Origin: Lepidodermella squamata
Lineage: Eukaryota > Animalia > Gastrotricha
DNA length: 64,000 bases
Assembly (NCBI GenBank): GCA_047495785.1
Contig: JBLDXI010000042.1
Location: 372,001-436,000 of the forward strand
Direction of reading: 5' to 3'
Shown piece after piece: positions 2,801 through 56,078 of this stretch (within the stretch, counting starts at the first letter, position 1; each line of letters starts with the position of its first letter). The notes below the pieces were generated by a model, which saw nothing but the letters and a program-made list of their open reading frames with translations, did no database searches and was not told where the DNA came from. Both the position numbers and the translations under genes were made by a program.

Positions 2801-2916
2801 TGGATCCAAAAGTGCTGTTTTTATAGGACTTATTGTCGATCTAATCTAATAAAATAAAGGATCTATGGGCATCGATCGTGAGTAGGTCCTAATTTTACTG
2901 TGCGATTTATTACGTA

Positions 2917-3517
2917 CCGTAAAAACCGAAATTGGGTGCCGTCTTTTTATAGTTTCAAACCAAGAAAAAAGTGAGGGTTTATTACAGGCGAGGTACAATT
3001 GTAGGCTGTGGTATTATTTACTTGAATCTATCATCATTAGATTCAAATGAATTTGGAAAAGAGGTTAAAAATGAAAAAACAGTCAAATTTCCTCTTCGTG
3101 TAGAGATCGTTTTCATTTTTTCATTCTCCTCGGCATCTTCCTCGATCATCAACCACACCGGGAGAATGCTTTCCACAGAAGAGGAGGGTATGATGTAAAA
3201 GTTTGAGATGAGAAAAATGAAACTCAACTTGTTTTAGGTTGTTCTTGACGGGAAATGATAACAACTCATCTCAACTAACAGGCATTTATATTCAGATCCG
3301 ATTTGAGCTTCGCATCAATTTAATTGAATGTTTGCTAAAACGAACTCGGAAATGCAATTAGTAAATTTCAATCATGTTACAAGTGCAAAATATTTATTAA
3401 GAAACCAAGACACTAATTTAGGCCTGAGATATTATTGGTTCAATCGTCGCTCAGACTGGGGGCTTAAACCAGGCGAGGCACTATTATAGACCTAGGACCC
3501 AATTTCGGTTTTTACGG
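2917..3517. mobile_element. Tc1/mariner-pogo-type MITE
   Basis: Perfect TIR ccgtaaaaaccgaaattgggt / acccaatttcggtttttacgg, flanked on both sides by TA (2915-2916, 3518-3519); subterminal caggcgagg motif near both ends. Confidence 0.85.
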
Positions 3518-3737
3518 TAAGTGGGAACCCCTACAAATGTCAAATTTAGATCTAGCCAGGGTCTAGTTTTCAACGACGGGGACTTGGTTCGATTACCTCT
3601 GGCATAAACCATTAAAAGACTATGATTCCAAAATCAGCAAACCCAAAAGCACTCAGAAGAAGATCAAAACAATATATCAATAGCTTATCACACGACCTGT
3701 CAGAAGACCGAATTTTAGTTTGCTGTTCGCCTATGCC

Positions 3738-4789
3738 TCAAAGGCTCACTGGGTAATTGTCAGCTTTCGCCTCGCGCAGGTAGGTGAAAAAGCCGAAATG
3801 CTGCTCGTACTCTTTGCTCATCGATGTATCATCAGGGCGGCGGTCGTAGAATGAGTACCAAAAGAGAGGACCCTCGCCAACGCTAGGCTCCCAGCTAGCG
3901 AAGGCTGAGTAGTAGTTTAGGGCACCTTCAAGGCTGGGTTGGACCCCCGAAGAAGGAAGGTCTGATCCGCCACTCGGGAAACCAGTTTCAGTCAAGCGAG
4001 CCTAAAATAAAAAAAATTGCAAAAAATTACAAATAATTCAATTATTTCGAAAATAAGGAAGATAAGTATGAAGTTTGGGAAAATTGCCGCATCTAGATCA
4101 ATTATCTCGCCTCTCGCCCTGTTTACCTTCGATCCATATTTTGCTACCATTTTATTCCAATTGTTCTGCAGCTGAATGACAGGGTTGGATGCGTTGTAGC
4201 TCGAGCTGAAAAACGGGTAGAAATTAACCCCCAAAATGTCACAGCCAGCCGCCAGTTTCGCCGTTTCACTCTCGATAGCCGTCGACATGTACTCGGTAAT
4301 ACGCTGGACCGTTCCAACCTTAACATCCTGACCCGTAGCCGCCTTAACCGCGGTCTTGATACCATCGACCTTGACCAGAATTTGATCAGCCGTGTATTTG
4401 CCATTTGGGGTTAGATTTTCGTTTCCGACCAGAATAGCTTCAATAGTATCCGGGTAGTTTTTCACCGCGTCAACAGCCGCGCTCAACTGGCCAGCGTACC
4501 ACGATTCATCGGTCATGTAGACACCCAGGTACAACTTCACGCCGTATTTAGCCGCAGATTGGGCGACAGTGTAGCCGCTGAAGTTGGAGTAGAAGGTTCG
4601 GACGTGGGTGAAGTATTTGGAGATTTGCGCGAAATCAGCGTCGATAGCTAGATCGAGGCCTTTGGATGCTGATTTGCCTTTACTCGAGTATTCGGTGTTG
4701 TGCATAGCCGAATAACAAGTGCCTCGGGAGATTAGCGACTCAGCAGTGTCAATGACACTGAAAGCCAGCAAGATCACGGGAATCTTCAT
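3738..4789 (-). CDS. Secreted glycoside hydrolase family 17 endo-beta-1,3-glucanase (exons 4789-4127, 4001-3738; 308 aa)
   Basis: Signal peptide; GH17 motifs CYS, VRTF, ILVGNE (acid/base Glu), GVNFYPFF and TETGFPS (nucleophile Glu). A phase-0 GT-AG intron at 4126-4002 joins YGSK to ARLTETGFPSGG. Confidence 0.9.
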
Positions 4790-5653: not shown

Positions 5654-7990
5654 ATGAATATCGTCTTTTTGCTGATTACGGCTGTTTTCGTGGCAGCTTT
5701 TGCCTCGGAAAACGCAACGGAGCCTGTTACCTTGAAACTGTTGATGATGTATGCGTTAACTGGGGCTTTCATCAAATTCGAGGACGCCCCAGCTACAGCT
5801 CAACTCGTCGCGAAGCTGATCAACAATCGGACCGATATTTTGCCTGGTTACAAGCTCGAAATCGAAATCGGAGACGAATCGATCAACTCGGGTCGATCCG
5901 TCCTGGCTGCTGTTAATTTCTCGAGATCTATGGAAAACAACAATCAGGTCATTCCTTCGCCTATAGTAATTGGAGCTAGCGTTACAACGGCTTGCAAAGC
6001 TCTCGGAGCAACCCTATCTTACTTCGACTACGTCGCTCTTTCAACAGGTTGCGTGGCTGACATAACGAGCAACAAAAACCGATTTCCGAACCTATTTCTA
6101 TCAACCGGCGTTTCGTCCACTAAGAACTACGGCATTATCAGATTTTTTCAAGAAATCGGGAAGTGGAACAGATTCGCTCTGCTTGTTTACGCTCAGGCAT
6201 CAAGTGAGGTCTTTGAAGAAACTATCCACTTTAAAACGTCAGCGATAAATCGGGGTATGCAGGTTTCCTGGTTCAATGCCGTTCTAAACTTTGAACTAGA
6301 AACAGCTTTGTCCTTGAAAAAAAGTGGCTCAAGGGTAATATATATCGCAGCTAATAGCAAAAGCTTCATGGTAATGTTCTTCTGCTACACATACATGGTT
6401 GGCATGACAGGGAAAAGGTTCGTATTTTTCACCGGGGATAACAACTTCCCAGACCCAGCATTCATACCTGAATCCACTCTACCCGAGGGTTGTAGTAGAG
6501 CTGCCCTCTACGAACAGATCAAATCAACATTCTGGACAGGAATTCTCGATGGCTCTCAAGTCCCACAAGCTAAATCATACCTTGGTTTCAATCAGTCACA
6601 ATTCGACGAGATGTTGTTCGATTTCAAGAAATCTCGCACGAAAGGCCAAGATTTCGACTTCAGGTTCTTGGTTCACGACGTGACTTCAATCGCAGCTCTT
6701 GCTCTCAATTCAGCGGATCAAATATTATCGAGTAAAAACATGTCGCTGAGAGATTTCAAAGCGAAACCGAAATCCGTCTCTGAAGCGATAAAACAAGCAT
6801 TTCGAACAATCGACGTTTCGGGGCTAAGAAATTCGAGGATTAGGTACGATGAGAACGGATCGTTCTACGGCATGTTGATTAACATTGATTATTGGACACC
6901 GAAAAGTGGTTTCCAAAAGGTGATCGCAATGGACCATGACGGCAATGTGTCAGATTCGAACAGTTACTCCGTGAAGCAAATCGTCAAAAATTTCCCTTGG
7001 CTAACTACCGATGGCAAACCTCCGAAAGATCAAGTGAACTACATGCAAATTCTTCACGCAATTGTATTTGAATCTGAAAGGGCCATTTGGGTGATTAGCA
7101 TCATAGTAAGCTTGTTACAAATCGCAGGCCTTGCTTTCACCCGTCAACTCAGGTCGATCAATCAAACCTTTGAGCTGACCCATCCCAACGTGAAATGTTT
7201 CGGCATTTTCGGTTGCCTTTTCTTGAACTTGGGATCATTCCTATGCGCAACTGGGATAAGCAAAGCTTTGCCAGGTGCGATTCTGGCATGTCTCATTTTT
7301 GGACTAGCCGTCATCACCTGGGCCACTGGAGTTAGAATCGTCATTGTTGAACTAGCTATTCATTCGAAACTCCGCAAAGTCAGCTCAAGGATATCTTCCC
7401 ATTTGTTCCGAACTGGGAAGAGAAAGCTGAAAAGATTGAACGAACGCCAACTCACAGTTTTGAACGAAGTTACTGGCAAGATTGAAAACGAAATCATCGT
7501 GGCGGGTCGGGTCAGTTTCAAAGCTATGGCAATTTACTTGGCCACGCATATTGCCTTTCTATCTACGTGGCTGGTTGTAGTCCCATTCGAATGCAGGCTG
7601 AAGCATTTTTCGATCGATGAATACAACGAGGAAACTGATACGAAGCTGGAACATTCAGTTATTGAATGCATGTCAGGCAGCCACGTCGTTTGGGCTCTTT
7701 CGTTTCTCATCTTCCATGAGATTCTACTCATCGCTTTAGGATTTCTTGCCATCCTACTTCGGTCGTCGAAAAGGAATCGACTGTGCCCGGAGTTCAATCA
7801 TAATTCTTTGTTGATAATGTTGGGTATAGCGATTTATATCATCGGAATATTTGCTCTGCTAATCGTCGATAATCCGCTGATGCGGCTTGAGGTTGTAGCC
7901 GGGCTCAGTTTGGTGTATTCAGGCCTTTCCAGTGCAACTTGGATCGAGCCAACTATCGCCATGTACCAGTCAAGTGGAGCCCGCGTGTAG
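5654..7990 (+). CDS. Class C GPCR, GABA-B-like (Venus flytrap + 7TM), intronless
   Basis: Signal peptide, INNRTDILPGYKL motif, ANF-receptor-type VFT, W...G.PP.D linker without a Cys-rich domain, about 7 hydrophobic segments, AATAAA after the stop. Confidence 0.88.
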   Translation: MNIVFLLITAVFVAAFASENATEPVTLKLLMMYALTGAFIKFEDAPATAQLVAKLINNRTDILPGYKLEIEIGDESINSGRSVLAAVNFSRSMENNNQVIPSPIVIGASVTTACKALGATLSYFDYVALSTGCVADITSNKNRFPNLFLSTGVSSTKNYGIIRFFQEIGKWNRFALLVYAQASSEVFEETIHFKTSAINRGMQVSWFNAVLNFELETALSLKKSGSRVIYIAANSKSFMVMFFCYTYMVGMTGKRFVFFTGDNNFPDPAFIPESTLPEGCSRAALYEQIKSTFWTGILDGSQVPQAKSYLGFNQSQFDEMLFDFKKSRTKGQDFDFRFLVHDVTSIAALALNSADQILSSKNMSLRDFKAKPKSVSEAIKQAFRTIDVSGLRNSRIRYDENGSFYGMLINIDYWTPKSGFQKVIAMDHDGNVSDSNSYSVKQIVKNFPWLTTDGKPPKDQVNYMQILHAIVFESERAIWVISIIVSLLQIAGLAFTRQLRSINQTFELTHPNVKCFGIFGCLFLNLGSFLCATGISKALPGAILACLIFGLAVITWATGVRIVIVELAIHSKLRKVSSRISSHLFRTGKRKLKRLNERQLTVLNEVTGKIENEIIVAGRVSFKAMAIYLATHIAFLSTWLVVVPFECRLKHFSIDEYNEETDTKLEHSVIECMSGSHVVWALSFLIFHEILLIALGFLAILLRSSKRNRLCPEFNHNSLLIMLGIAIYIIGIFALLIVDNPLMRLEVVAGLSLVYSGLSSATWIEPTIAMYQSSGARV

Positions 7991-8740
7991 CCGAGGAAAA
8001 GGCTCGCTGAGTTACTAACTTTTAAAACTGAAATAAATGATATGCTGTTAACATAAGTGACAGAAGTACGTGTACAACGCAAGCAAAAGAAAATACACGG
8101 GTTTTATATTGAGAGACGAAGTCACATCTCATCGTCAGAAAATATTTAGAAAAATTCAAAAAATCACGAATAGTAATTTAGTATGTCACTTGTTAATGGA
8201 ATTTCAAAGAGTCCAGAGAAACCGTCCGAACAGGTAAAATACCGAAAATTGCAGTTACCGGGGTTCTACGGGGTTTTACGGGTTTTCTCTCCGGACAATG
8301 TTTTTATTTCTCAGGTTAAATTGCGGATGAACGATGAAATATTTTCCCCGTGTGTTAAATTAAAAAAAAACTTTGGTCAACTTACTAAACGTTGCCAAAT
8401 GAACAACAATTGGAACCTCATTGCAGTAAAGAAAAGCTCGACCTCTGAGCTATGCGATAGTGCCCCCTGTACTTCGAGATTTACGTCGATAGTGGTTTGA
8501 ACTAAGGGCTTTTTTCATTGTCTAATAATTGTCTATGCATTCACAGCTTCATTCTAAATTCTGAAGTTCTTCATTCGTTCTGAAGTCCAAGTACAGCCAA
8601 AGACGGATGAAAGAGGAGCATTGCTGTGGTTGCCAGAGCTACCATCCGTTTAGATCGATTGCAGCCAATTAATCAAATTGATGAGCCTTCTTCTTTCCCA
8701 GCCATATTACCATTCATCATGTTATTGTATTTTCAGAAAA

Positions 8741-9973
8741 ATGGACTTGTTTAGACATTTCTCTGTTCTAAGTTTGTTCATTTTTACTTTGCTCAAAGGC
8801 AGAATCATTTGTAACGGAACGCCGTTAAGCCGGGAAGCTGATTCCTTTCTAAGAGCTAAATTCTTCGACGAATGTCACGCTAACGACGGCTTTTACGACC
8901 ACAAAGTCAATTTGGAACTCCTATTCTACGTCTTCAATCTCGTTGAATTCAACGAACAATCCGAGCTGATGTCGATATTCGCTACCCTCAACATTTGCTG
9001 GTCGGACGAATGTGTTCGATGGGACAACAGCATTGAACAACTCGAGTCAAACCAGTCAAAATCGATCGCAGCCGAAATCCGAGACATCACCCACGTCGCG
9101 TTGCCGAGTGATTTGTTCTGGAAGCCGGTGATGATTCACCGCAATAGCCCAACTGACGTACAGGCGATTGCGGAAAATGGTAAAAATCTTCTGACCAACA
9201 TTTTCCGAAATGGCTGGGTTGAATGGTCGCCGACTGGTACGTGGACAACTTCATGCCCTCTTCATCTTAAATTGTTCCCCTTTGACACTCAAACTTGCAT
9301 GTTCGCTTTCGAGTTGTGGGATACGCAATTTTACACCAATATAACAGTTGCTGATATCATGTTAGACATCGAAAATCCCGAGGGTTTCACTAGCTCGATG
9401 GCTGTTTGGAAGCTGGTCAGTTACCGCAGCGAGGTGACCGAAACTTGCTATCCAATGGGAAATCCGCCGACGATTCATTGTTCAGGAGAAGCCCATTACT
9501 ACTTCACGATCAAGCGAAAAGTTGAACCCTATTTATATGCGATTTTCATCCCGGCTGTATCGCTGGTCCTTCTGCAAATCAGCCCATTTGCTATGGCGCC
9601 GCACAACCCGGAGAGGGCTGAGTATTCCGTATCGATCCTATTAGCTTTCGCAGTCATTCATGGGATGGTGCAACAAGAAATCCCACATACAGCCGAGACG
9701 GTTTATTTCGTGGTCTATCTCAATGTCAACATCTTAGTTGGAACTTTCTGTTCGGTGTATTCAGTCATCAGCGTCGGATTATCGGAAATTTTGGCTGGGA
9801 AGAAGGGTGGGCCAATGAAGATAACACTTATTCCGTTTAATTACTCATGCCAGCGAAAGCCTATTCGGATCAATGTCGTTAGGTTTATTGACATGATTGT
9901 TTTCGCTGTAATATTGATCACCCTCATAATAACGCATATTGTATTCTTCAAATTGATGACGACTAATTGGTAG
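8741..9973 (+). CDS. Cys-loop pentameric ligand-gated ion channel subunit, divergent
   Basis: Signal peptide; WSD..VRWD, FWKP, Cys-loop CPLHLKLFPFDTQTC (C-x13-C), four TM helices, very short M3-M4 loop. ATG at 8741 follows tttcag. Confidence 0.9.
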   Translation: MDLFRHFSVLSLFIFTLLKGRIICNGTPLSREADSFLRAKFFDECHANDGFYDHKVNLELLFYVFNLVEFNEQSELMSIFATLNICWSDECVRWDNSIEQLESNQSKSIAAEIRDITHVALPSDLFWKPVMIHRNSPTDVQAIAENGKNLLTNIFRNGWVEWSPTGTWTTSCPLHLKLFPFDTQTCMFAFELWDTQFYTNITVADIMLDIENPEGFTSSMAVWKLVSYRSEVTETCYPMGNPPTIHCSGEAHYYFTIKRKVEPYLYAIFIPAVSLVLLQISPFAMAPHNPERAEYSVSILLAFAVIHGMVQQEIPHTAETVYFVVYLNVNILVGTFCSVYSVISVGLSEILAGKKGGPMKITLIPFNYSCQRKPIRINVVRFIDMIVFAVILITLIITHIVFFKLMTTNW

Positions 9974-15005: not shown

Positions 15006-17381
15006 ATGAATATTATCATCGTCACGCTTTCACTATTTTCTTATTTTCTCTTTGCTGCGGCTGTTGAGAACGTTACAGAGCCCGTTACTTTGAAACTATT
15101 GATGATGTACGCGATGACTGGGGCCTTCATCAAATTTGAGGACGTCCCAGCTACGGCACAACTCGTCGCAAAGCTGATCAACAATCGGAGTGATATTTTG
15201 CCTGGATACAAGCTCGAAATCGAAATCGGAGACGAATCAGTCAACTCGGGTAGATCCGTCCTAGCTGCGGTTAATTTCTCGCGATCTATGGAGAAAAACG
15301 ACAAAATTATTCCGTCGCCCATCGTCATTGGGGCTAGCGTTACAGCTGCTTGCAATGCCCTCGGATCAACCCTATCTTACTTCGACTACGTCGCACTTTC
15401 AACAGGCTGCGTTGCTGATATAACAAGTAACAAAAGTCGATTTCCGAACCTATTTCTATCAACCGGCGTTTCGTCCACCAAAAACTACGGCATTGTTAGA
15501 TTTTTTCAAGAAATCGGGAAATGGAACAGATTTGCCCTCCTTGTCTTTGCACAGGCATCAAGTGAGGTCTTTGAAGGAACCATCCACTTCAAAACTACAG
15601 CGATAAGTCTAGGCATGGAGGTCTCGTGGTTCAACGTTGTTCTCAGCTTCGATCTTGAGACAGCCTGGTCTTTGAAGAACAGCGGCTCAAGGATAATCTA
15701 CATCGTAGCTAATAGCAAAAGCTTCATGGTCATGTTCTACTGTTATACTTACATGGTCGGCATGACTGGGAAAAGGTTCGTGTTTTTCACTGGGGACAAT
15801 AACTTCCCAGACCCAGCATTCATACCTGAATCCACCTTACCTGAGGGTTGTAGTAGAGCTGCACTTTACGAGCAGATCAAATCATCATTCTGGACAGGAA
15901 TTCTCGATGGGTCTCAAGTCCCACAGGCCAAATCATACCTTGGTTTGAATCAGTCCCAATTCGACGAGTTGCTGTTCGATTTCAAGAAATCTCGCACGAA
16001 AGGCCAGGATTTCGACTTCAGGTTCTTGGTTCATGACGTGACGTCAATCGCAGCTCTTGCCCTCAACTCAGCCGATCAAATTCTATCAAAGCAAAACATG
16101 TCACTGAGAGATTTTAAATCGAAACCGAACTATGTCTCAACAGCGATAAAACAAGCTTTTCGAACACTCGACTTTTCAGGGTTAAGAAATTCCAGGATAA
16201 GGTACGATGAGAACGGATCGTTCTACGGCATGTTGATCAACATCGATTATTGGACACCGAAAACTGGCTTCCAGAAGGTAATTGCAATGGACCATGACGG
16301 CAATGTGTCAGATTCGAAAAGTTACTCAGTGAAGCAAATCGTCAAGAATTTCCCTTGGCTGACTACTGATGGCAAACCTCCGAGAGATCGGGAGAATCAC
16401 GTAAAAATTCTCCACAAAAATCACTTCGATTCAGAAAAAACGATTTGGATGATGTGTATCGTCGCCACTCTACTCCAAATTTTCGGATTAGCCTTGACTA
16501 TGCGAGTTCATTCAATCAATCAAAGTTTCGAACTGACCCAGCCCAATGTGAAGTGTCTCGGAGTTTTCGGTTGCCTGCTGTTGAATTTCGGATCTTTTCT
16601 ATGTGTAACTGAGACAGGCGAAACTTTCCCACCGTTGATTGTCGCAACTTTCGGATTAGGAATAACTTTCATCACATGGGCAAGTGGAGTAAGGATTGTC
16701 ATTGTTGAACTAGCCATTCACTCGAAACTTCGAGGCGTAAGCTCTCGCATAACTTTCCACATGTTCAGAACTAGGAAGCAAAAGGCGAAAAAATTGAATG
16801 AAGGCCAAGTTGCAATTTTGAGCGTACTTACCACCAAGATAAAGCAAGAAATCATCGCGGCAGGGCGACTGAGCTTCAAACTCCTGCCAATTTTCGTGAT
16901 AACTCAAATCGCGTTTCTAGCTGCATGGCTTGTGATAGCTCCATTCAATTGCAAGGTGAAGCAATTTTCACGTGAAGAATATAACGAAGAAACTGATAAA
17001 AGAATCGACCATGACGTTATCGACTGCATTTCTGAAGATCACATTGCTTGGGCGATCTCGATTCTCATCTTCCATGCAATTCTCCTTATTTCCTTAGGAT
17101 TCCTCGCGATTCTTCTCCGGTCATCGGGGAGAAATCAACTATGCCCCGAGTTTAATCACAATGCTTTACTGATAATGCTAGGACTGGCGATTTATTTCAT
17201 TTCAATATTCGCGTTACTTATCATGAATAACCCATTGATGCGGCTTGAGGTTGTAGCAGCTCTCAGCTTGGTGTATTCAGGATTGGCGAGTGCGATTTGG
17301 ATCGAGCCAACTATTGTTCAGATTCAGATGAGCAAAGTCCATGCATTAGAAAAATGGAAACTTGGACATTATCATAAATGA
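15006..17381 (+). CDS. Class C GPCR, GABA-B-like, close paralog of 5654-7990
   Basis: Near-identical VFT domain to 5654-7990, 7TM region, TATAAAA at ~14925. Confidence 0.88.
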   Translation: MNIIIVTLSLFSYFLFAAAVENVTEPVTLKLLMMYAMTGAFIKFEDVPATAQLVAKLINNRSDILPGYKLEIEIGDESVNSGRSVLAAVNFSRSMEKNDKIIPSPIVIGASVTAACNALGSTLSYFDYVALSTGCVADITSNKSRFPNLFLSTGVSSTKNYGIVRFFQEIGKWNRFALLVFAQASSEVFEGTIHFKTTAISLGMEVSWFNVVLSFDLETAWSLKNSGSRIIYIVANSKSFMVMFYCYTYMVGMTGKRFVFFTGDNNFPDPAFIPESTLPEGCSRAALYEQIKSSFWTGILDGSQVPQAKSYLGLNQSQFDELLFDFKKSRTKGQDFDFRFLVHDVTSIAALALNSADQILSKQNMSLRDFKSKPNYVSTAIKQAFRTLDFSGLRNSRIRYDENGSFYGMLINIDYWTPKTGFQKVIAMDHDGNVSDSKSYSVKQIVKNFPWLTTDGKPPRDRENHVKILHKNHFDSEKTIWMMCIVATLLQIFGLALTMRVHSINQSFELTQPNVKCLGVFGCLLLNFGSFLCVTETGETFPPLIVATFGLGITFITWASGVRIVIVELAIHSKLRGVSSRITFHMFRTRKQKAKKLNEGQVAILSVLTTKIKQEIIAAGRLSFKLLPIFVITQIAFLAAWLVIAPFNCKVKQFSREEYNEETDKRIDHDVIDCISEDHIAWAISILIFHAILLISLGFLAILLRSSGRNQLCPEFNHNALLIMLGLAIYFISIFALLIMNNPLMRLEVVAALSLVYSGLASAIWIEPTIVQIQMSKVHALEKWKLGHYHK

Positions 17382-18143: not shown

Positions 18144-18216
18144 GCCCGGTTAGCTCAGTCGGTAGAGCATGGGACTCTTAATCCCAGGGTCGTGGGTTCG
18201 AGCCCCACATCGGGCG
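18144..18216 (+). tRNA. tRNA-Lys(CTT)
   Basis: 73-nt canonical eukaryotic tRNA-Lys sequence gcccggttagctcagtcggtagagcatgggactCTTaatcccagggtcgtgggttcgagccccacatcgggcg; A/B boxes; T-run terminator at ~18223-18228; no encoded CCA. Confidence 0.97.
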
Positions 18217-18792: not shown

Positions 18793-20215
18793 TATTTATT
18801 TATTTATTTATTTATTCGTTATCGCAAGTGCACTTGTCATGCGTATGCAATTAGCCAGCCAGGCGCCTCACTGAGGATAAAAGATATTTCTCTAGGTTAC
18901 AGTCAACATTAAGATATTGTTTAAAAACATTTAAAGAGGCAGAAACGACGTCAGCAGGTAGTTTGTTCCAATAATTAATTGTTCTTCTGTTAAAAAAATA
19001 TTTTTTGCAATCGCGTTTACACTTAGAAGGTCTTAGCCGGTGTTTGCTAGCGTAATTTGATTTAGAAAATTCATAGAAGTCGTCAAAAGTGACATCATAG
19101 AAGTGGTGATATAGCTTATAAGTTAATTTCAAATCATTTTTAAAGCGACGCTTTTCCAAGGAGTCCATTCCACTACGTTTCAATAAACAGTCATACGTAA
19201 TATGGGAGTAGCGAGGTATATTAAAGGCTCTTTTGAGAAAATTAAATTGTAATTTTTCTAGTGATTCTATGACAGTTAGCAAGTATGGCGAATATACGGA
19301 TGAACAGTAATCGATTATAGGAAGGACATACACACGGTAGGCTTCAAGTCTGAAGGAAGTATTAGTAAAGGCTCTACAAATCAATCCACATAGTCTAAGA
19401 CATTTTGTTTTAAGGTTATCGCAGTGAATTCTGAAGTCTAATTTTTTGTCCACAATTATACCTAAATCACGAGTAAAATCAACAACGTCAATCTCTTGCG
19501 TACCGATACGATAGTTAAAATCGAATTTACAGTTTAAACGTAAAACACAACATTTAGACGAGTTAATAGAGAGACCATGTTGTTCAAACCACCTACAAAT
19601 GTTATTTAAATCTTCCTGTAGTTTTTCACAGTCATCTTGAGATTCAATAATTTTAAATAATTTCGTGTCGTCGGCAAAGTATTTGGCCAGAGAATAAGAA
19701 AGGCATTCATCAACAAAAATTAAAAAAATTAAAAATAACAAAGGCCCCAGCACTGATCCCTGTGGGACACCAGATGGCAAGGGACACCAAGTAGAAAAAT
19801 TAGAACGAACTCTGACACGAAAATACCGATCAGAAAGATAAGATCGAAGCCAAGAGGATAGTTTTCCACAAATATTGATCTCCTCAAGTTTATCTAAAAG
19901 TAATTTAATAGGTACAGTATCAAAAGCCTTTGAAAGATCAAGGTACAAAATATCAACACTCTTGCCCAAATCGACCGCATTAATCCAAGTATTTAAACAA
20001 TTTAGAAGTTGAAGCTGACAAGAGCGTTTAGGTAAAAAACCGTATTGATTCTCAGGTATCAAGTTGTTTCTCTTTAGATAATTTAAAATTGATTCTTTAA
20101 TAATTTTCTCTTGAATTTTGCATAAAATACACGTAAGACTGATTGGTCTATAGTTAGAAGGAGCAGCGCGATCACCCCCTCTTGACATTTGGGAGTGACA
20201 TTTGCGCATTTCCAA
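18793..20215 (-). mobile_element. 5'-truncated non-LTR retrotransposon (CR1/L2-like LINE ORF2, reverse transcriptase)
   Basis: NYRPISLT, QYGF, LDLSKAFD, GVPQGSVLGPLLF, FADD, DLGIIVD and C-terminal FF..R.IN.WN.LP; 3' (TAAA)n tail at ~18793-18815; no endonuclease domain; AT-rich. Confidence 0.93.
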
Positions 20216-53393: not shown

Positions 53394-55859
53394 TCAACGT
53401 AACTGATTGAACGACTGATGATACGGGCGATGCGATTCACGCAAATTGAAAGAACCATGCTCGCGCATTGTTTCAACAGACGCCGGCCATTTTCGCGTTA
53501 CAACCGGGTAGAAAATTGCTAAGAAGGTAACAGCCGAATAAATCACCTCGCCACAAGCTATCGCAACGATTTGGCTGTTCCATTCCCTCAAAACAAGGAC
53601 GATGAGAACAATCGCCGCAAATAGAGTGGCCGTGTTAAAAGTCGCTAGTCGTGTTGTTAGAAAATCGCGTACGTGGGTAGGCGGCTTTGCAAGTGTCCTC
53701 AGCTCATACATGTGATAGCAACTGACGGAAATCATGGCAAAGTTTAGCGCGGCAAAAGCAGCTACCCAATAGATCATGCTATCAGAGCCGCACTTATCAG
53801 TAACAATTTCGAAGTAAACATCTCGCTCAGGGTCGAATTGCAAGGCTGAGGCCTCACTTATCAACTCGAGGGGTTCAATTAGCAGCCAAATTATCAGCAC
53901 GACCGTAGTGAGCAGACAAATCGATAGGCAAAGCGTTGCTGTTTTCGAGAAAACTTGATTCTGGTTCAGTTTAGCCACCCTAGGCGTCCGTGATCGGCCT
54001 AGATTGAGCCGCCTGTTGAGCATGCTCAGCTTTTTAGATCTTGACGGTGTTTTCCACTTCTTTTTCGACTCGCTGCTGTAGACAGCGACTGTCGATGGCA
54101 AAAGGTCTATCCCACTCACCTCCAACCATCGCGCAGCTGCGTGATGAAGGAACGGAGCGAAGGTGAAAGATCGAGCCAAAAAGACTGAACTGATCAAGGT
54201 GAGGCCAATTACAGGTAGAACTACAATCCAAGGGCAGATTTCTTCGCTGGGAGCTGTAATATGAACTATCGCCGCTGTATTAAGGATTAGACACCCTGCT
54301 GCGATGATAACTGCTATTCTAAGGTCGAACTGAATCTGCAAATCGGGGTCTCTGATAGTACAAGTCTTTCGGTAATAGATTCCCATAAAAACGATGATCA
54401 ACTGAATAGCGATAGATATTGAAGATAGAACTATGATTGGCAAAGTCACGCTTTGTCCGAGGTTTCCATCGACAGTTTCGACCTTCGACAAATCTTTCGG
54501 TGGCTCGCCGGTGTTCGTTAACCAAATCGGATCCGGGGAATCAGGGCTGAACTTTTCGATTGCGTAACTCGACACCGTGACATTCCCAGGTCGTGCAAGG
54601 TAAATATTCATCAAATTCACGAAACGGCGATCAATCCATTGGGTGACTGATAGATTTTCATTGTCGATTTCGAGCCTGGATGACGTAGATAACCTACCCA
54701 TTCTCAGCCCGATAACCTCAAGTTTCGATGAAGTTTCATTCACGATTCGCTGGATGACTTTAGGTTTTGATGAAAAATCACTCAAGGTAAGATTCATCCC
54801 ATTCAGAACTGATTCAGATTTGTTGAGAGTTATCACTGCAGACATCATCGAATCGTGGCAAAGTAACCTCGCGACGTAATCAACCTGAGATTTTGACTGG
54901 TTTCTGAAGGTAACGTCAAGCCGTCTTTCGAACTCGATCGAATTGTACCCTAAACTCGTTTGTCCTGTGAAGACCCCGCCGAATAGTTTTGTTATCGCTA
55001 TCCAGTACGTGATTTTAAGTTGTTCTTCAACCTGTTCCTGCGTGCATTCTTTCGGAAACGAGCTCAGCGCGCTGTTTGCTACGAAAAAGCACTGGTAAGG
55101 TAGCACGAAGGCGTAGTTCGGAGCTCGAATTCCCGCTCGGTATGCGTCACACAGAAGATTCCCGCACCACGCCCCCTGCGATAGAACGAAAACAAAAACT
55201 CTAGCGTCACTAGCCTTAAGATCTAGGGCAAAATCAAGGCCGAAGTTCATCACGGCGCTGAATTTCACGACCTGAATTCCGTTATTTGAAGACAGGCTGA
55301 GCAAAGACCGAGCGACTAGGTAGTCATTCGTTGTAATCGCTGAGGTTACAATTCCGATTTGGCTCCATTTCCCAACTGATTTGATGAAATTTATCAGTCC
55401 GATATTCGTATTTTCCATCGGCATTTGAATTCGATAGATGTTGGAATACAACGATCGTTGCGCTATGAAACCTGGCGCGGTGCAGCCATGCGTGAACATC
55501 GTGAAGAAATTCGCTTTAGCCGCGACGGCTACGTTACCGCAGCCTGTGCTTGGCCCGACAACTATCGGAGCGACAGAGGATGAAGTCGAGTTTGAGAGGA
55601 AGTTCGCGAAGCTTGCGGCTGATTTTGTAGCTAGATAACCTTCGTCACCAACAGCCATTGTCAGCTCGTAATTCGGTAGAATATCAGCCCGGGAATTGAC
55701 TTCATCTATAACGATTTGCATCGAAGCTTGGCAAACAGCTGATGTGGACGGCTCCTGGCCTGTTTTCGCAAGCAATGTCAGTATCGAGAGCTGTTTTGGC
55801 TTAAGAAGCCCTGACGCTGCGCCAAGCGATACTGTCAAAAGTAAAACGCTCAATTTCAT
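53394..55859 (-). CDS. Class C GPCR, GABA-B-like, intronless, distant paralog
   Basis: Signal peptide, VNSRADILPNYEL, IVVGP, YSNIYR, W...GEPPKD and a 7TM region. Confidence 0.88.
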   Translation of the reverse strand: MKLSVLLLTVSLGAASGLLKPKQLSILTLLAKTGQEPSTSAVCQASMQIVIDEVNSRADILPNYELTMAVGDEGYLATKSAASFANFLSNSTSSSVAPIVVGPSTGCGNVAVAAKANFFTMFTHGCTAPGFIAQRSLYSNIYRIQMPMENTNIGLINFIKSVGKWSQIGIVTSAITTNDYLVARSLLSLSSNNGIQVVKFSAVMNFGLDFALDLKASDARVFVFVLSQGAWCGNLLCDAYRAGIRAPNYAFVLPYQCFFVANSALSSFPKECTQEQVEEQLKITYWIAITKLFGGVFTGQTSLGYNSIEFERRLDVTFRNQSKSQVDYVARLLCHDSMMSAVITLNKSESVLNGMNLTLSDFSSKPKVIQRIVNETSSKLEVIGLRMGRLSTSSRLEIDNENLSVTQWIDRRFVNLMNIYLARPGNVTVSSYAIEKFSPDSPDPIWLTNTGEPPKDLSKVETVDGNLGQSVTLPIIVLSSISIAIQLIIVFMGIYYRKTCTIRDPDLQIQFDLRIAVIIAAGCLILNTAAIVHITAPSEEICPWIVVLPVIGLTLISSVFLARSFTFAPFLHHAAARWLEVSGIDLLPSTVAVYSSESKKKWKTPSRSKKLSMLNRRLNLGRSRTPRVAKLNQNQVFSKTATLCLSICLLTTVVLIIWLLIEPLELISEASALQFDPERDVYFEIVTDKCGSDSMIYWVAAFAALNFAMISVSCYHMYELRTLAKPPTHVRDFLTTRLATFNTATLFAAIVLIVLVLREWNSQIVAIACGEVIYSAVTFLAIFYPVVTRKWPASVETMREHGSFNLRESHRPYHQSFNQLR

Positions 55860-56078
55860 GTCAAGTGACAAAACTAGAAGTGACTTTTGAATTGAATTTA
55901 TCTAAAGCTCTAGATGTGAAATTCGATCTTCCGTATCGGCTTCCTTCCGAATGGGCCTCATGCAGGAAGAACATGATGTTTTCAAGAATTGCACACGTGG
56001 TTCAATTCGATTTCCGCAAACGGACCTAAGATAAAAAAAACCTTGATCCAAAGTTGTTAACTGCTTTTATTCAATGAA

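What the first reader, a model, noticed from the sequence alone, without database searches (positions are those of the whole stretch)
3738..4789. Oomycete-like GH17 beta-1,3-glucanase domesticated in an animal genome
Seen: intact secreted GH17 with both catalytic Glu residues, a spliceosomal intron and host-type MITE and GPCR neighbours, which argues against contamination. Established: GH17 is typical of plants, fungi, oomycetes and bacteria, while animal beta-1,3-glucanases are usually GH16. From memory, CYS.MH..Y, DADFAQ, LYLGV.MT.E.WY.GQ and VGTVQR resemble oomycete GH17s. Inference: horizontal transfer enabling digestion of laminarin/chrysolaminarin, or attack on fungal and oomycete walls.
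Basis: partly seen in the sequence, partly recalled or inferred. Interest (0 to 1): 0.7.

Follow-up and report, generated by a model that had tools for sequence, protein, structure and literature searches.

The report
Oomycete-type beta-glucanase gene in a gastrotrich
A small invertebrate, probably the gastrotrich Lepidodermella squamata, carries an intact, spliced and selectively maintained gene family for a secreted beta-1,3-glucan-cutting enzyme whose relatives are almost all water-mould (oomycete) genes. It is a well-supported case of a foreign sugar-digesting gene adopted by an animal, which is a known kind of event.

Summary
On the minus strand lies a two-exon gene (4789..4127 and 4001..3738, with a 125-nt GT-AG intron). 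It encodes a 308-residue protein with a hydrophobic N-terminus and both GH17 catalytic glutamates (E124 in GNEN, E226 in TETG).

**Foreign origin.** An exhaustive protein search and maximum-likelihood trees place it inside the oomycete GH17 radiation. The only named non-oomycete relatives are a Brachionus contig, a Scenedesmus gene and a more distant tardigrade gene.

**Not contamination or a chimera.**
- The gene sits on a 5.1-Mb contig, next to class C GPCR and Cys-loop channel genes and a dispersed host MITE-like element.
- A second collinear region on contig C36 keeps the same gene, intron and neighbours.
- dN/dS between the two copies is 0.09.
- The genome holds at least seven GH17 loci in three subfamilies.

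**Still open.**
- The immediate donor is unresolved: it may be an oomycete or an intermediary.
- Expression and enzyme activity were not tested.
- A digestive role (laminarin-type glucans, fungal or oomycete walls) is an inference.

The scan's first stage had already noted a paralogue on another contig of this genome (s1-365980). I rate this a new member of a known kind, of moderate interest.

The parts
4127..4789 (-). Exon 1 (221 codons from the ATG). It holds the hydrophobic N-terminal signal-like segment and barrel strands 1-6, including the acid/base Glu124 (codon 4418-4420, GNEN).
   Evidence: 36 homologues, E to 2e-68; position of the motif.
4002..4126 (-). Spliceosomal intron: 125 nt, GT...AG, phase 0, AT-rich with a polypyrimidine tract.
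   Evidence: The same intron position occurs in the C36 copy (136 nt, about 93% identical). The homologous P. infestans gene and the C29 paralogue are intronless.
3738..4001 (-). Exon 2 (87 codons plus stop), with the nucleophile Glu226 (codon 3987-3989, TETG) and the C-terminal strands.
   Evidence: The PDB alignments show that this Glu is the residue mutated in 4WTR.
2915..3520 (.). MITE-like non-autonomous element with 26-nt terminal inverted repeats, 217 bp downstream of the stop codon. It is absent from the collinear C36 copy.
   Evidence: 99% and 96% identical full-length copies on C48, about 40 matches on many contigs.
5654..7990 (+). Neighbouring class C GPCR gene (ANF_receptor ligand-binding region); context only.
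   Evidence: The same gene follows the GH17 copy on C36.
8678..9973 (+). Neighbouring Cys-loop ligand-gated channel gene; context only.
   Evidence: Neur_chan_LBD, E 1.5e-19; nearest Atlas clusters are from molluscs, arthropods and nematodes.

Best explanation
This is a functional gene for a secreted retaining GH17 beta-1,3-glucan hydrolase or transglycosylase. Glu124 acts as acid/base and Glu226 as nucleophile on a (beta/alpha)8 barrel. It belongs to a gene family that entered this animal lineage by horizontal transfer from an oomycete or a close carrier of oomycete-type GH17. After entry the family duplicated into at least three subfamilies, gained introns and took on host neighbours, and it is kept by purifying selection.

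Shown here: the gene model, family membership, the catalytic residues, nesting among oomycete sequences, physical integration in the host genome, and selection.

Inferred: secretion, and the role. The most likely role is gut digestion of laminarin- or chrysolaminarin-type storage glucans and of fungal or oomycete cell walls in this microbe-eating animal. Defence against such parasites is the second option.
For: **Family.** The family profile hits the GH17 structures 4WTP (E 3.4e-22), 6FCG (1e-14) and the plant GH17s. The intronless paralogue folds at pLDDT 91.8, and its top structural matches are GH17 enzymes.

**Origin.** The exhaustive search found 1239 representatives at E<=1e-3. Every named one I looked up is an oomycete, except Scenedesmus, a Brachionus contig and a tardigrade. 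In the trees the window gene lies in a clade supported at 99/92 to 99/98 that is nested among oomycete clades. Bacterial outgroups attach far from it.

**Integration.** The contig is 5.1 Mb long. The neighbours are of animal type. A host MITE-like element sits nearby. The C42 and C36 regions are collinear over more than 50 kb and keep the gene, intron and neighbours.

**Selection.** dN/dS is 0.086, with dS 0.29 and Fisher p 1.6e-20.

**Post-transfer change.** The P. infestans homologue is intronless. Paralogues on C29, C74 and C3 carry a different intron position or none.
Against:
- Pfam PF00332 gives no hit on the separate exons and falls below its cut-off on the full-length paralogue (26.3 against 28.2 bits).
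- The closest clade holds no named oomycete, so the direct donor is unknown.
- The root rests on very long bacterial branches.
- The group tested in the p = 0.50 AU test was chosen after I had seen the tree.
- GC3 (0.60) is only slightly above that of the neighbours (about 0.50), so base composition says nothing about origin.
- The closest solved relative is a glucanosyltransferase, so plain hydrolysis is not certain.
Confidence: 0.72

Rival explanations
1. Secondary transfer. The animal did not take the gene from an oomycete. It took it from another freshwater eukaryote that already carried an oomycete-type GH17, for example a green alga eaten as food, or the gene was exchanged among micro-invertebrates.
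For: The nearest clade contains Scenedesmus (on a 1.2-Mb contig) with GC-rich metagenome sequences, and AT-rich rotifer-like contigs, but no named oomycete. An N-terminal PAN domain joined to GH17 occurs in the C74 paralogue, the rotifer-like P0004, Scenedesmus and the tardigrade. It was not found in six oomycete members tested. All non-oomycete rows can form one clade (p-AU 0.50).
Against: Branching inside that clade is unresolved. Basal oomycetes that parasitise rotifers and nematodes are unsampled and could fill the gap. The window subfamily itself has no PAN domain.
Confidence: 0.2
2. Vertical inheritance. This is an old animal (or older) GH17 gene, retained in a few micro-invertebrate phyla and lost everywhere else.
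For: Related genes are present in three animal phyla: this genome, a Brachionus contig with host-like AT-rich composition, and a tardigrade gene with introns between UDPGT genes.
Against: A clade of the gastrotrich/rotifer group plus the tardigrade is rejected (p-AU 0.006). The animal genes are nested several supported nodes deep among oomycete paralogue clades. No other named animal appeared among the hits I looked up from the exhaustive search. A 2025 paper states that GH17 had not been documented in animals (PMC11800479).
Confidence: 0.04
3. Artefact. The gene comes from contaminating oomycete or rotifer DNA, or from a chimeric join made by whole-genome amplification.
For: If this is the published L. 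squamata assembly, it was made from MDA-amplified DNA of one animal. In that assembly 370 non-metazoan contigs had to be removed (PMC11660948).
Against: The same order of GH17, GPCR and Cys-loop gene, and the same intron, occur in two diverged collinear regions on contigs of 5.1 and 1.3 Mb. A host repeat family lies 217 bp from the stop. Paralogues are present on three further multi-megabase contigs.
Confidence: 0.02

Closest known systems
Oomycete secreted GH17 glucanases (COG5309 / yeast Scw-Bgl2 type; for example the roughly 20 GH17 genes of Phytophthora parasitica, PMC4176579)
   Same: 50-56% identity over the whole catalytic domain, the same conserved motifs and catalytic glutamates, and secretion.
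   Different: This gene is encoded in an animal genome, carries a spliceosomal intron and has no oomycete-type C-terminal extension. In an animal without a glucan wall it cannot serve wall remodelling, which is the role proposed for the oomycete genes.
Rhizomucor miehei RmBgt17A (PDB 4WTP/4WTR), a GH17 beta-1,3-glucanosyltransferase
   Same: It is the closest solved relative by profile (E 3.4e-22, nearly full length). The nucleophile Glu aligns with the residue mutated in 4WTR. The fold matches at TM 0.7-0.8.
   Different: Only about 20% identity. Whether the animal enzyme transfers or hydrolyses is unknown.
Bemisia tabaci Bta06115/Bta06118, GH17 genes acquired from plants (PMC11800479)
   Same: An animal GH17 obtained by horizontal transfer, flanked by host genes. 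The whitefly enzyme is a proven beta-1,3-glucanase.
   Different: The donor lineage differs (plant-type GH17 there, oomycete-type here). The host phylum differs, and here the gene forms a multi-copy family. No biochemical data exist here.
Horizontally acquired carbohydrate-active enzymes of rotifers, nematodes and arthropods (for example the cellulolytic genes of Adineta ricciae, cited in PMC11800479)
   Same: The same kind of event: a microbial or protist glycoside hydrolase is adopted, gains introns and is duplicated in a small invertebrate.
   Different: The enzyme family and donor type differ. In the library I searched I found no paper that describes horizontal gene transfer in gastrotrichs.

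Membership tests
Glycoside hydrolase family 17 (clan GH-A) | Significant sequence similarity to established GH17 members | tested here: met
   The profile of the family alignment hits GH17 structures 4WTP (3.4e-22), 6FCG (1.1e-14), 3UR7, 4HPG, 2CYG and 1GHS. The single paralogue sequence hits 6FCG and 4WTP at about 2e-5.
Glycoside hydrolase family 17 (clan GH-A) | Match to Pfam PF00332 above its curated cut-off | tested here: not met
   No hit for either exon alone. The full-length paralogue scores 26.3 bits against a cut-off of 28.2. Oomycete relatives score from 19 to 33 bits. The Pfam model is plant-centred and under-scores this whole branch, including proteins that databases name GH17.
Glycoside hydrolase family 17 (clan GH-A) | (beta/alpha)8 barrel fold closest to GH17 structures | tested here: met
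   Tested on the intronless paralogue on C29 (59% identical). Its model has pLDDT 91.8, and the top Foldseek matches are 8AKP, 6FCG, 4WTR, 6JMS and 4WTP. The window protein itself was not folded, because the joined two-exon model was left out.
Glycoside hydrolase family 17 (clan GH-A) | Acid/base Glu after strand 4 (N-E motif) and nucleophile Glu after strand 7 | tested here: met
   E124 in GNEN and E226 in TETG. The nucleophile column is invariant and the acid/base column at least 90% conserved in the alignment. E226 aligns with the catalytic Glu mutated in 4WTR.
Glycoside hydrolase family 17 (clan GH-A) | Activity on beta-1,3-glucans | not testable with these tools
   Needs recombinant enzyme and assays.
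Domesticated horizontally transferred gene in an animal | Phylogenetic nesting inside a non-animal donor group | tested here: met
   Trees. The named outgroup clades are all oomycete. Caveats: the outgroups have long branches and the direct donor is unresolved.
Domesticated horizontally transferred gene in an animal | Physical linkage to host genes and repeats on a long contig | tested here: met
Domesticated horizontally transferred gene in an animal | Host-type gene structure and purifying selection | tested here: met
   A GT-AG intron is kept in both copies. dN/dS is 0.086.
Domesticated horizontally transferred gene in an animal | Transcription and correct splicing | not testable with these tools

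The most novel reading that the evidence does not exclude
One oomycete-derived GH17 lineage, often fused to a PAN/apple domain, has passed repeatedly between unrelated freshwater eukaryotes (gastrotrichs, monogonont rotifers, scenedesmacean green algae). Tardigrades made a separate acquisition. If so, this would be a eukaryote-to-eukaryote shared glucanase gene, and micro-invertebrates would have become able to digest beta-1,3-glucan several times through it.
Probability: 0.3. Interest if true: 0.6.

Novelty: new member of a known kind. Interest (0 to 1): 0.45.

Why it matters
Animals normally cut beta-1,3-glucans with GH16 enzymes. The only published animal GH17 I found is a plant-derived gene in a whitefly. 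Here an oomycete-type GH17 family is fixed, expanded and under selection in a gastrotrich, a phylum for which I found no study of gene transfer. Relatives turn up in probable rotifers and in a tardigrade. This gives a concrete, testable example of how microscopic grazers may have gained the ability to digest algal storage glucans or fungal and oomycete walls. It also points to oomycete parasites of meiofauna as possible gene donors.

Tried and rejected
- **Pfam on the two exons separately:** no GH17 hit. The family was established through homologues and a profile instead.
- **The joined two-exon protein:** never built or searched. Each exon was used by reference, and the intronless C29 paralogue stood in for full-length analyses.
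- **The look-up of sequencing runs:** There is therefore no read support, no expression data and no depth test.
- **COX1 search of the assembly, to name the organism:** no match. The organism is inferred only from assembly statistics in PMC11660948 (122 Mb in 157 contigs, against 121.2 Mb in 151 here) and from other agents' notes.
- **Synteny between the C3 paralogues and the metagenome contig carrying their nearest relative, P0066:** none beyond the gene itself.
- **Paper search for the run and assembly accessions of the nearest unnamed hits:** nothing useful.
- **Careful mixture-model tree on 73 rows:** killed by the sandbox, from memory or its own time limit. I used LG+G4 careful trees plus a smaller quick mixture tree.
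- **Bacterial outgroups:** very long branches that do not group together in every tree.
- **Monophyly of this genome's copies alone:** rejected (p-AU 0.02).
- **Base composition as a sign of foreign origin:** uninformative.

Full report
**The gene**

The minus strand of window 3738-4789 carries a two-exon gene.
- Exon 1 runs from the ATG at 4789 to 4127 (221 codons) and is followed by GTAAAC.
- An AT-rich 125-nt intron ends in TTTTAG at 4002.
- Exon 2 (4001-3738) adds 87 codons and a stop.

The product is 308 residues long. It starts with a short hydrophobic stretch typical of a signal peptide. That is inference from sequence only, as no predictor was available.

Each exon was used by reference. 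An intronless paralogue from the same genome served wherever a full-length sequence was needed.

**Family**

Pfam found nothing in the separate exons. Exon 1 alone found 36 homologues. The best are unnamed sequences, a 'family 17 glucosidase SCW11' from a Brachionus plicatilis contig (58% identity), and Phytophthora proteins (50-56%). Exon 2 independently matches the same proteins at 48-56%.

A profile of 29 family members hits solved GH17 enzymes over nearly their full length:
- Rhizomucor miehei glucanosyltransferase 4WTP, E 3.4e-22
- Formosa endo-laminarinase 6FCG, E 1e-14
- several plant beta-1,3-glucanases

The intronless paralogue on contig C29 folds with pLDDT 91.8 into an alternating strand-helix barrel. 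Its best structural matches are GH17 enzymes.

The window protein has Glu124 in GNEN (codon 4418-4420) and Glu226 in TETG (codon 3987-3989). Glu226 aligns with the catalytic Glu that is replaced by Ala in the 4WTR active-site mutant.

Pfam PF00332 stays just under its cut-off even for the full-length paralogue (26.3 against 28.2 bits). The same is true of many oomycete proteins that databases name GH17. I read this as a limit of a plant-centred model, not as evidence against membership.

**Where the family comes from**

HMMER against 1.84 billion cluster representatives, with the C29 paralogue as query, gave 1239 hits at E<=1e-3 and 81 at E<=1e-30. Names were available for the hits and for 30 representatives I looked up. 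All of these are oomycetes: Phytophthora, Pythium, Lagenidium, Albugo, Peronospora, Hyaloperonospora, Aphanomyces, Saprolegnia, Achlya and Thraustotheca. There are three exceptions:
- a Scenedesmus gene on a 1.2-Mb contig;
- the 1.4-kb Brachionus contig;
- a RefSeq gene of the tardigrade Paramacrobiotus metropolitanus.

The trees agree on the main point (FastTree on 168 rows; IQ-TREE LG+G4 on 73 and 76 rows; a quick C20 mixture tree on 39 rows). The window gene and its C36 twin lie in a clade supported at 99/92 to 99/98. That clade also holds several oomycete clades, each containing both saprolegnian and peronosporalean members. Albugo and further oomycete clades branch outside it. Bacterial GH17-like sequences used as outgroups attach far from the animal genes. 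Their branches are very long, so the root is only indicative.

AU tests gave three results:
- This genome's copies alone do not form a clade (p 0.02).
- All non-oomycete rows together can form one clade (log-likelihood difference 0.03, p 0.50). I defined this group after seeing the tree.
- Adding the tardigrade is rejected (p 0.006).

So there were at least two entries of oomycete-type GH17 into animals. The direct donor of the gastrotrich genes remains open.

The Brachionus contig and two Logan contigs of its clade are strongly AT-rich (GC3 0.21-0.28, flanks 19-24% GC). That composition fits monogonont rotifers and not oomycetes. The Scenedesmus-like sequences are GC-rich.

**Integration in the host**

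- The window is C42:372001-436000 of a 121.2-Mb assembly in 151 contigs. C42 is 5.1 Mb long.
- The gene is followed within 865 bp by a class C GPCR gene and then by a Cys-loop channel gene. The channel's nearest Atlas clusters are from molluscs, arthropods and nematodes.
- 217 bp beyond the stop lies a 606-bp element with 26-nt terminal inverted repeats. It has 99% and 96% identical full-length copies on contig C48 and about 40 matches across the genome.
- A region of contig C36 is collinear with the window and its upstream flank over more than 50 kb, at about 82-94% identity. It contains the same GH17 gene, the same intron position (136 nt, about 93% identical) and the same neighbours. It lacks the MITE-like element.

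Random amplification chimeras cannot produce the same junctions in two diverged copies, so the 'chimeric assembly' refutation fails.

Between the two copies dN is 0.025 and dS is 0.29, giving omega 0.086 (Fisher p 1.6e-20; counts summed over the two exons).

**The paralogues in this genome**

| Contig | Features |
|---|---|
| C29 | Intronless copy, 59% identical. This is the 936-base stretch noted earlier by the scan as s1-365980. |
| C74 | N-terminal PAN-like domain and one intron at a different position. |
| C3 | Three copies (37-41% identical), two of them in tandem. |
| C36 | A truncated copy 9 kb from the intact C36 gene. |

The P. infestans homologue is intronless. The introns are therefore best read as gains after arrival.

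**The organism**

The assembly has no COX1 match. Its size and contig number fit the published MDA/HiFi assembly of the gastrotrich Lepidodermella squamata (122 Mb, 157 contigs, 2.99% heterozygosity; PMC11660948). Other agents reached the same guess. I treat this as probable, not shown.

**Function**

Shown: an intact retaining-glycosidase active site in a conserved barrel, under purifying selection.

Inferred: secretion and substrate. Oomycete GH17s are mostly secreted and are thought to remodel the organism's own beta-1,3-glucan wall (PMC4176579). An animal has no such wall. The likeliest use is therefore extracellular breakdown of dietary beta-1,3-glucans (algal laminarin or chrysolaminarin, fungal and oomycete walls). 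Defence against fungal or oomycete parasites is the alternative.

The closest solved relative is a transglycosylase, so the balance between hydrolysis and transfer is open.

**Novelty**

The 2025 whitefly study states that GH17 had not been documented in animals and reports plant-derived copies (PMC11800479). My literature searches found no description of oomycete-type GH17 in gastrotrichs, rotifers or tardigrades. Adoption of foreign carbohydrate-active enzymes by small invertebrates is a well-known kind of event, so I class this as a new member of a known kind.

**Not done**

- Enzyme assays.
- Any search or fold of the joined spliced protein.

Noticed in passing
L008:1525-2466 (G000:C3, about 1901886-1902458): This GH17 paralogue has the acid/base Glu replaced (GNSD instead of GNEN/GNEC) but keeps the nucleophile (TETAWP). 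It ends in a hydrophobic tail that looks like a membrane or GPI anchor. It may be a non-catalytic glucan-binding derivative.
   Followed up: partly
L004 (G000:C36, about 743196-744227): A truncated GH17 copy 9 kb from the intact C36 gene, inside a local tandem duplication. It lacks about the first 117 codons, and the reading frame runs on past the exon 1 end with the GTAAA of the donor site missing. It is probably a pseudogene fragment.
   Followed up: partly
L009:1228-2490 (G000:C74); also P0004, P0042 and P0090: A PAN/apple domain fused in front of GH17 occurs in the C74 paralogue, a rotifer-like contig, Scenedesmus and a tardigrade gene. It was absent from six oomycete relatives scanned. 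The AU test separates the tardigrade's GH17 domain from the rest.
   Followed up: partly
window 1-30600 against G000:C36:715000-785000: More than 50 kb of collinear sequence at about 82-94% identity, with tandem repeats of a 2-5-kb unit upstream. It is either a very divergent retained haplotype or a large segmental duplication. dS of the GH17 pair is 0.29.
   Followed up: partly
window 5654-7990, 15006-17381, 53394-55871: Three class C GPCR genes (ANF_receptor + 7tm_3) in one window. The first two are 80% identical at the DNA level, which points to a locally expanding receptor family.
   Followed up: no
window 18144-18216 and 18851-20215: A tRNA-Lys(CTT) gene lies next to a 454-codon reverse-transcriptase ORF (RVT_1).
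   Followed up: no
L041:6001-7874 (Paramacrobiotus metropolitanus BHEN01000315.1): The tardigrade PAN-GH17 gene has introns and lies between UDP-glucuronosyltransferase genes. It looks like an independent, host-integrated acquisition of oomycete-type GH17.
   Followed up: partly
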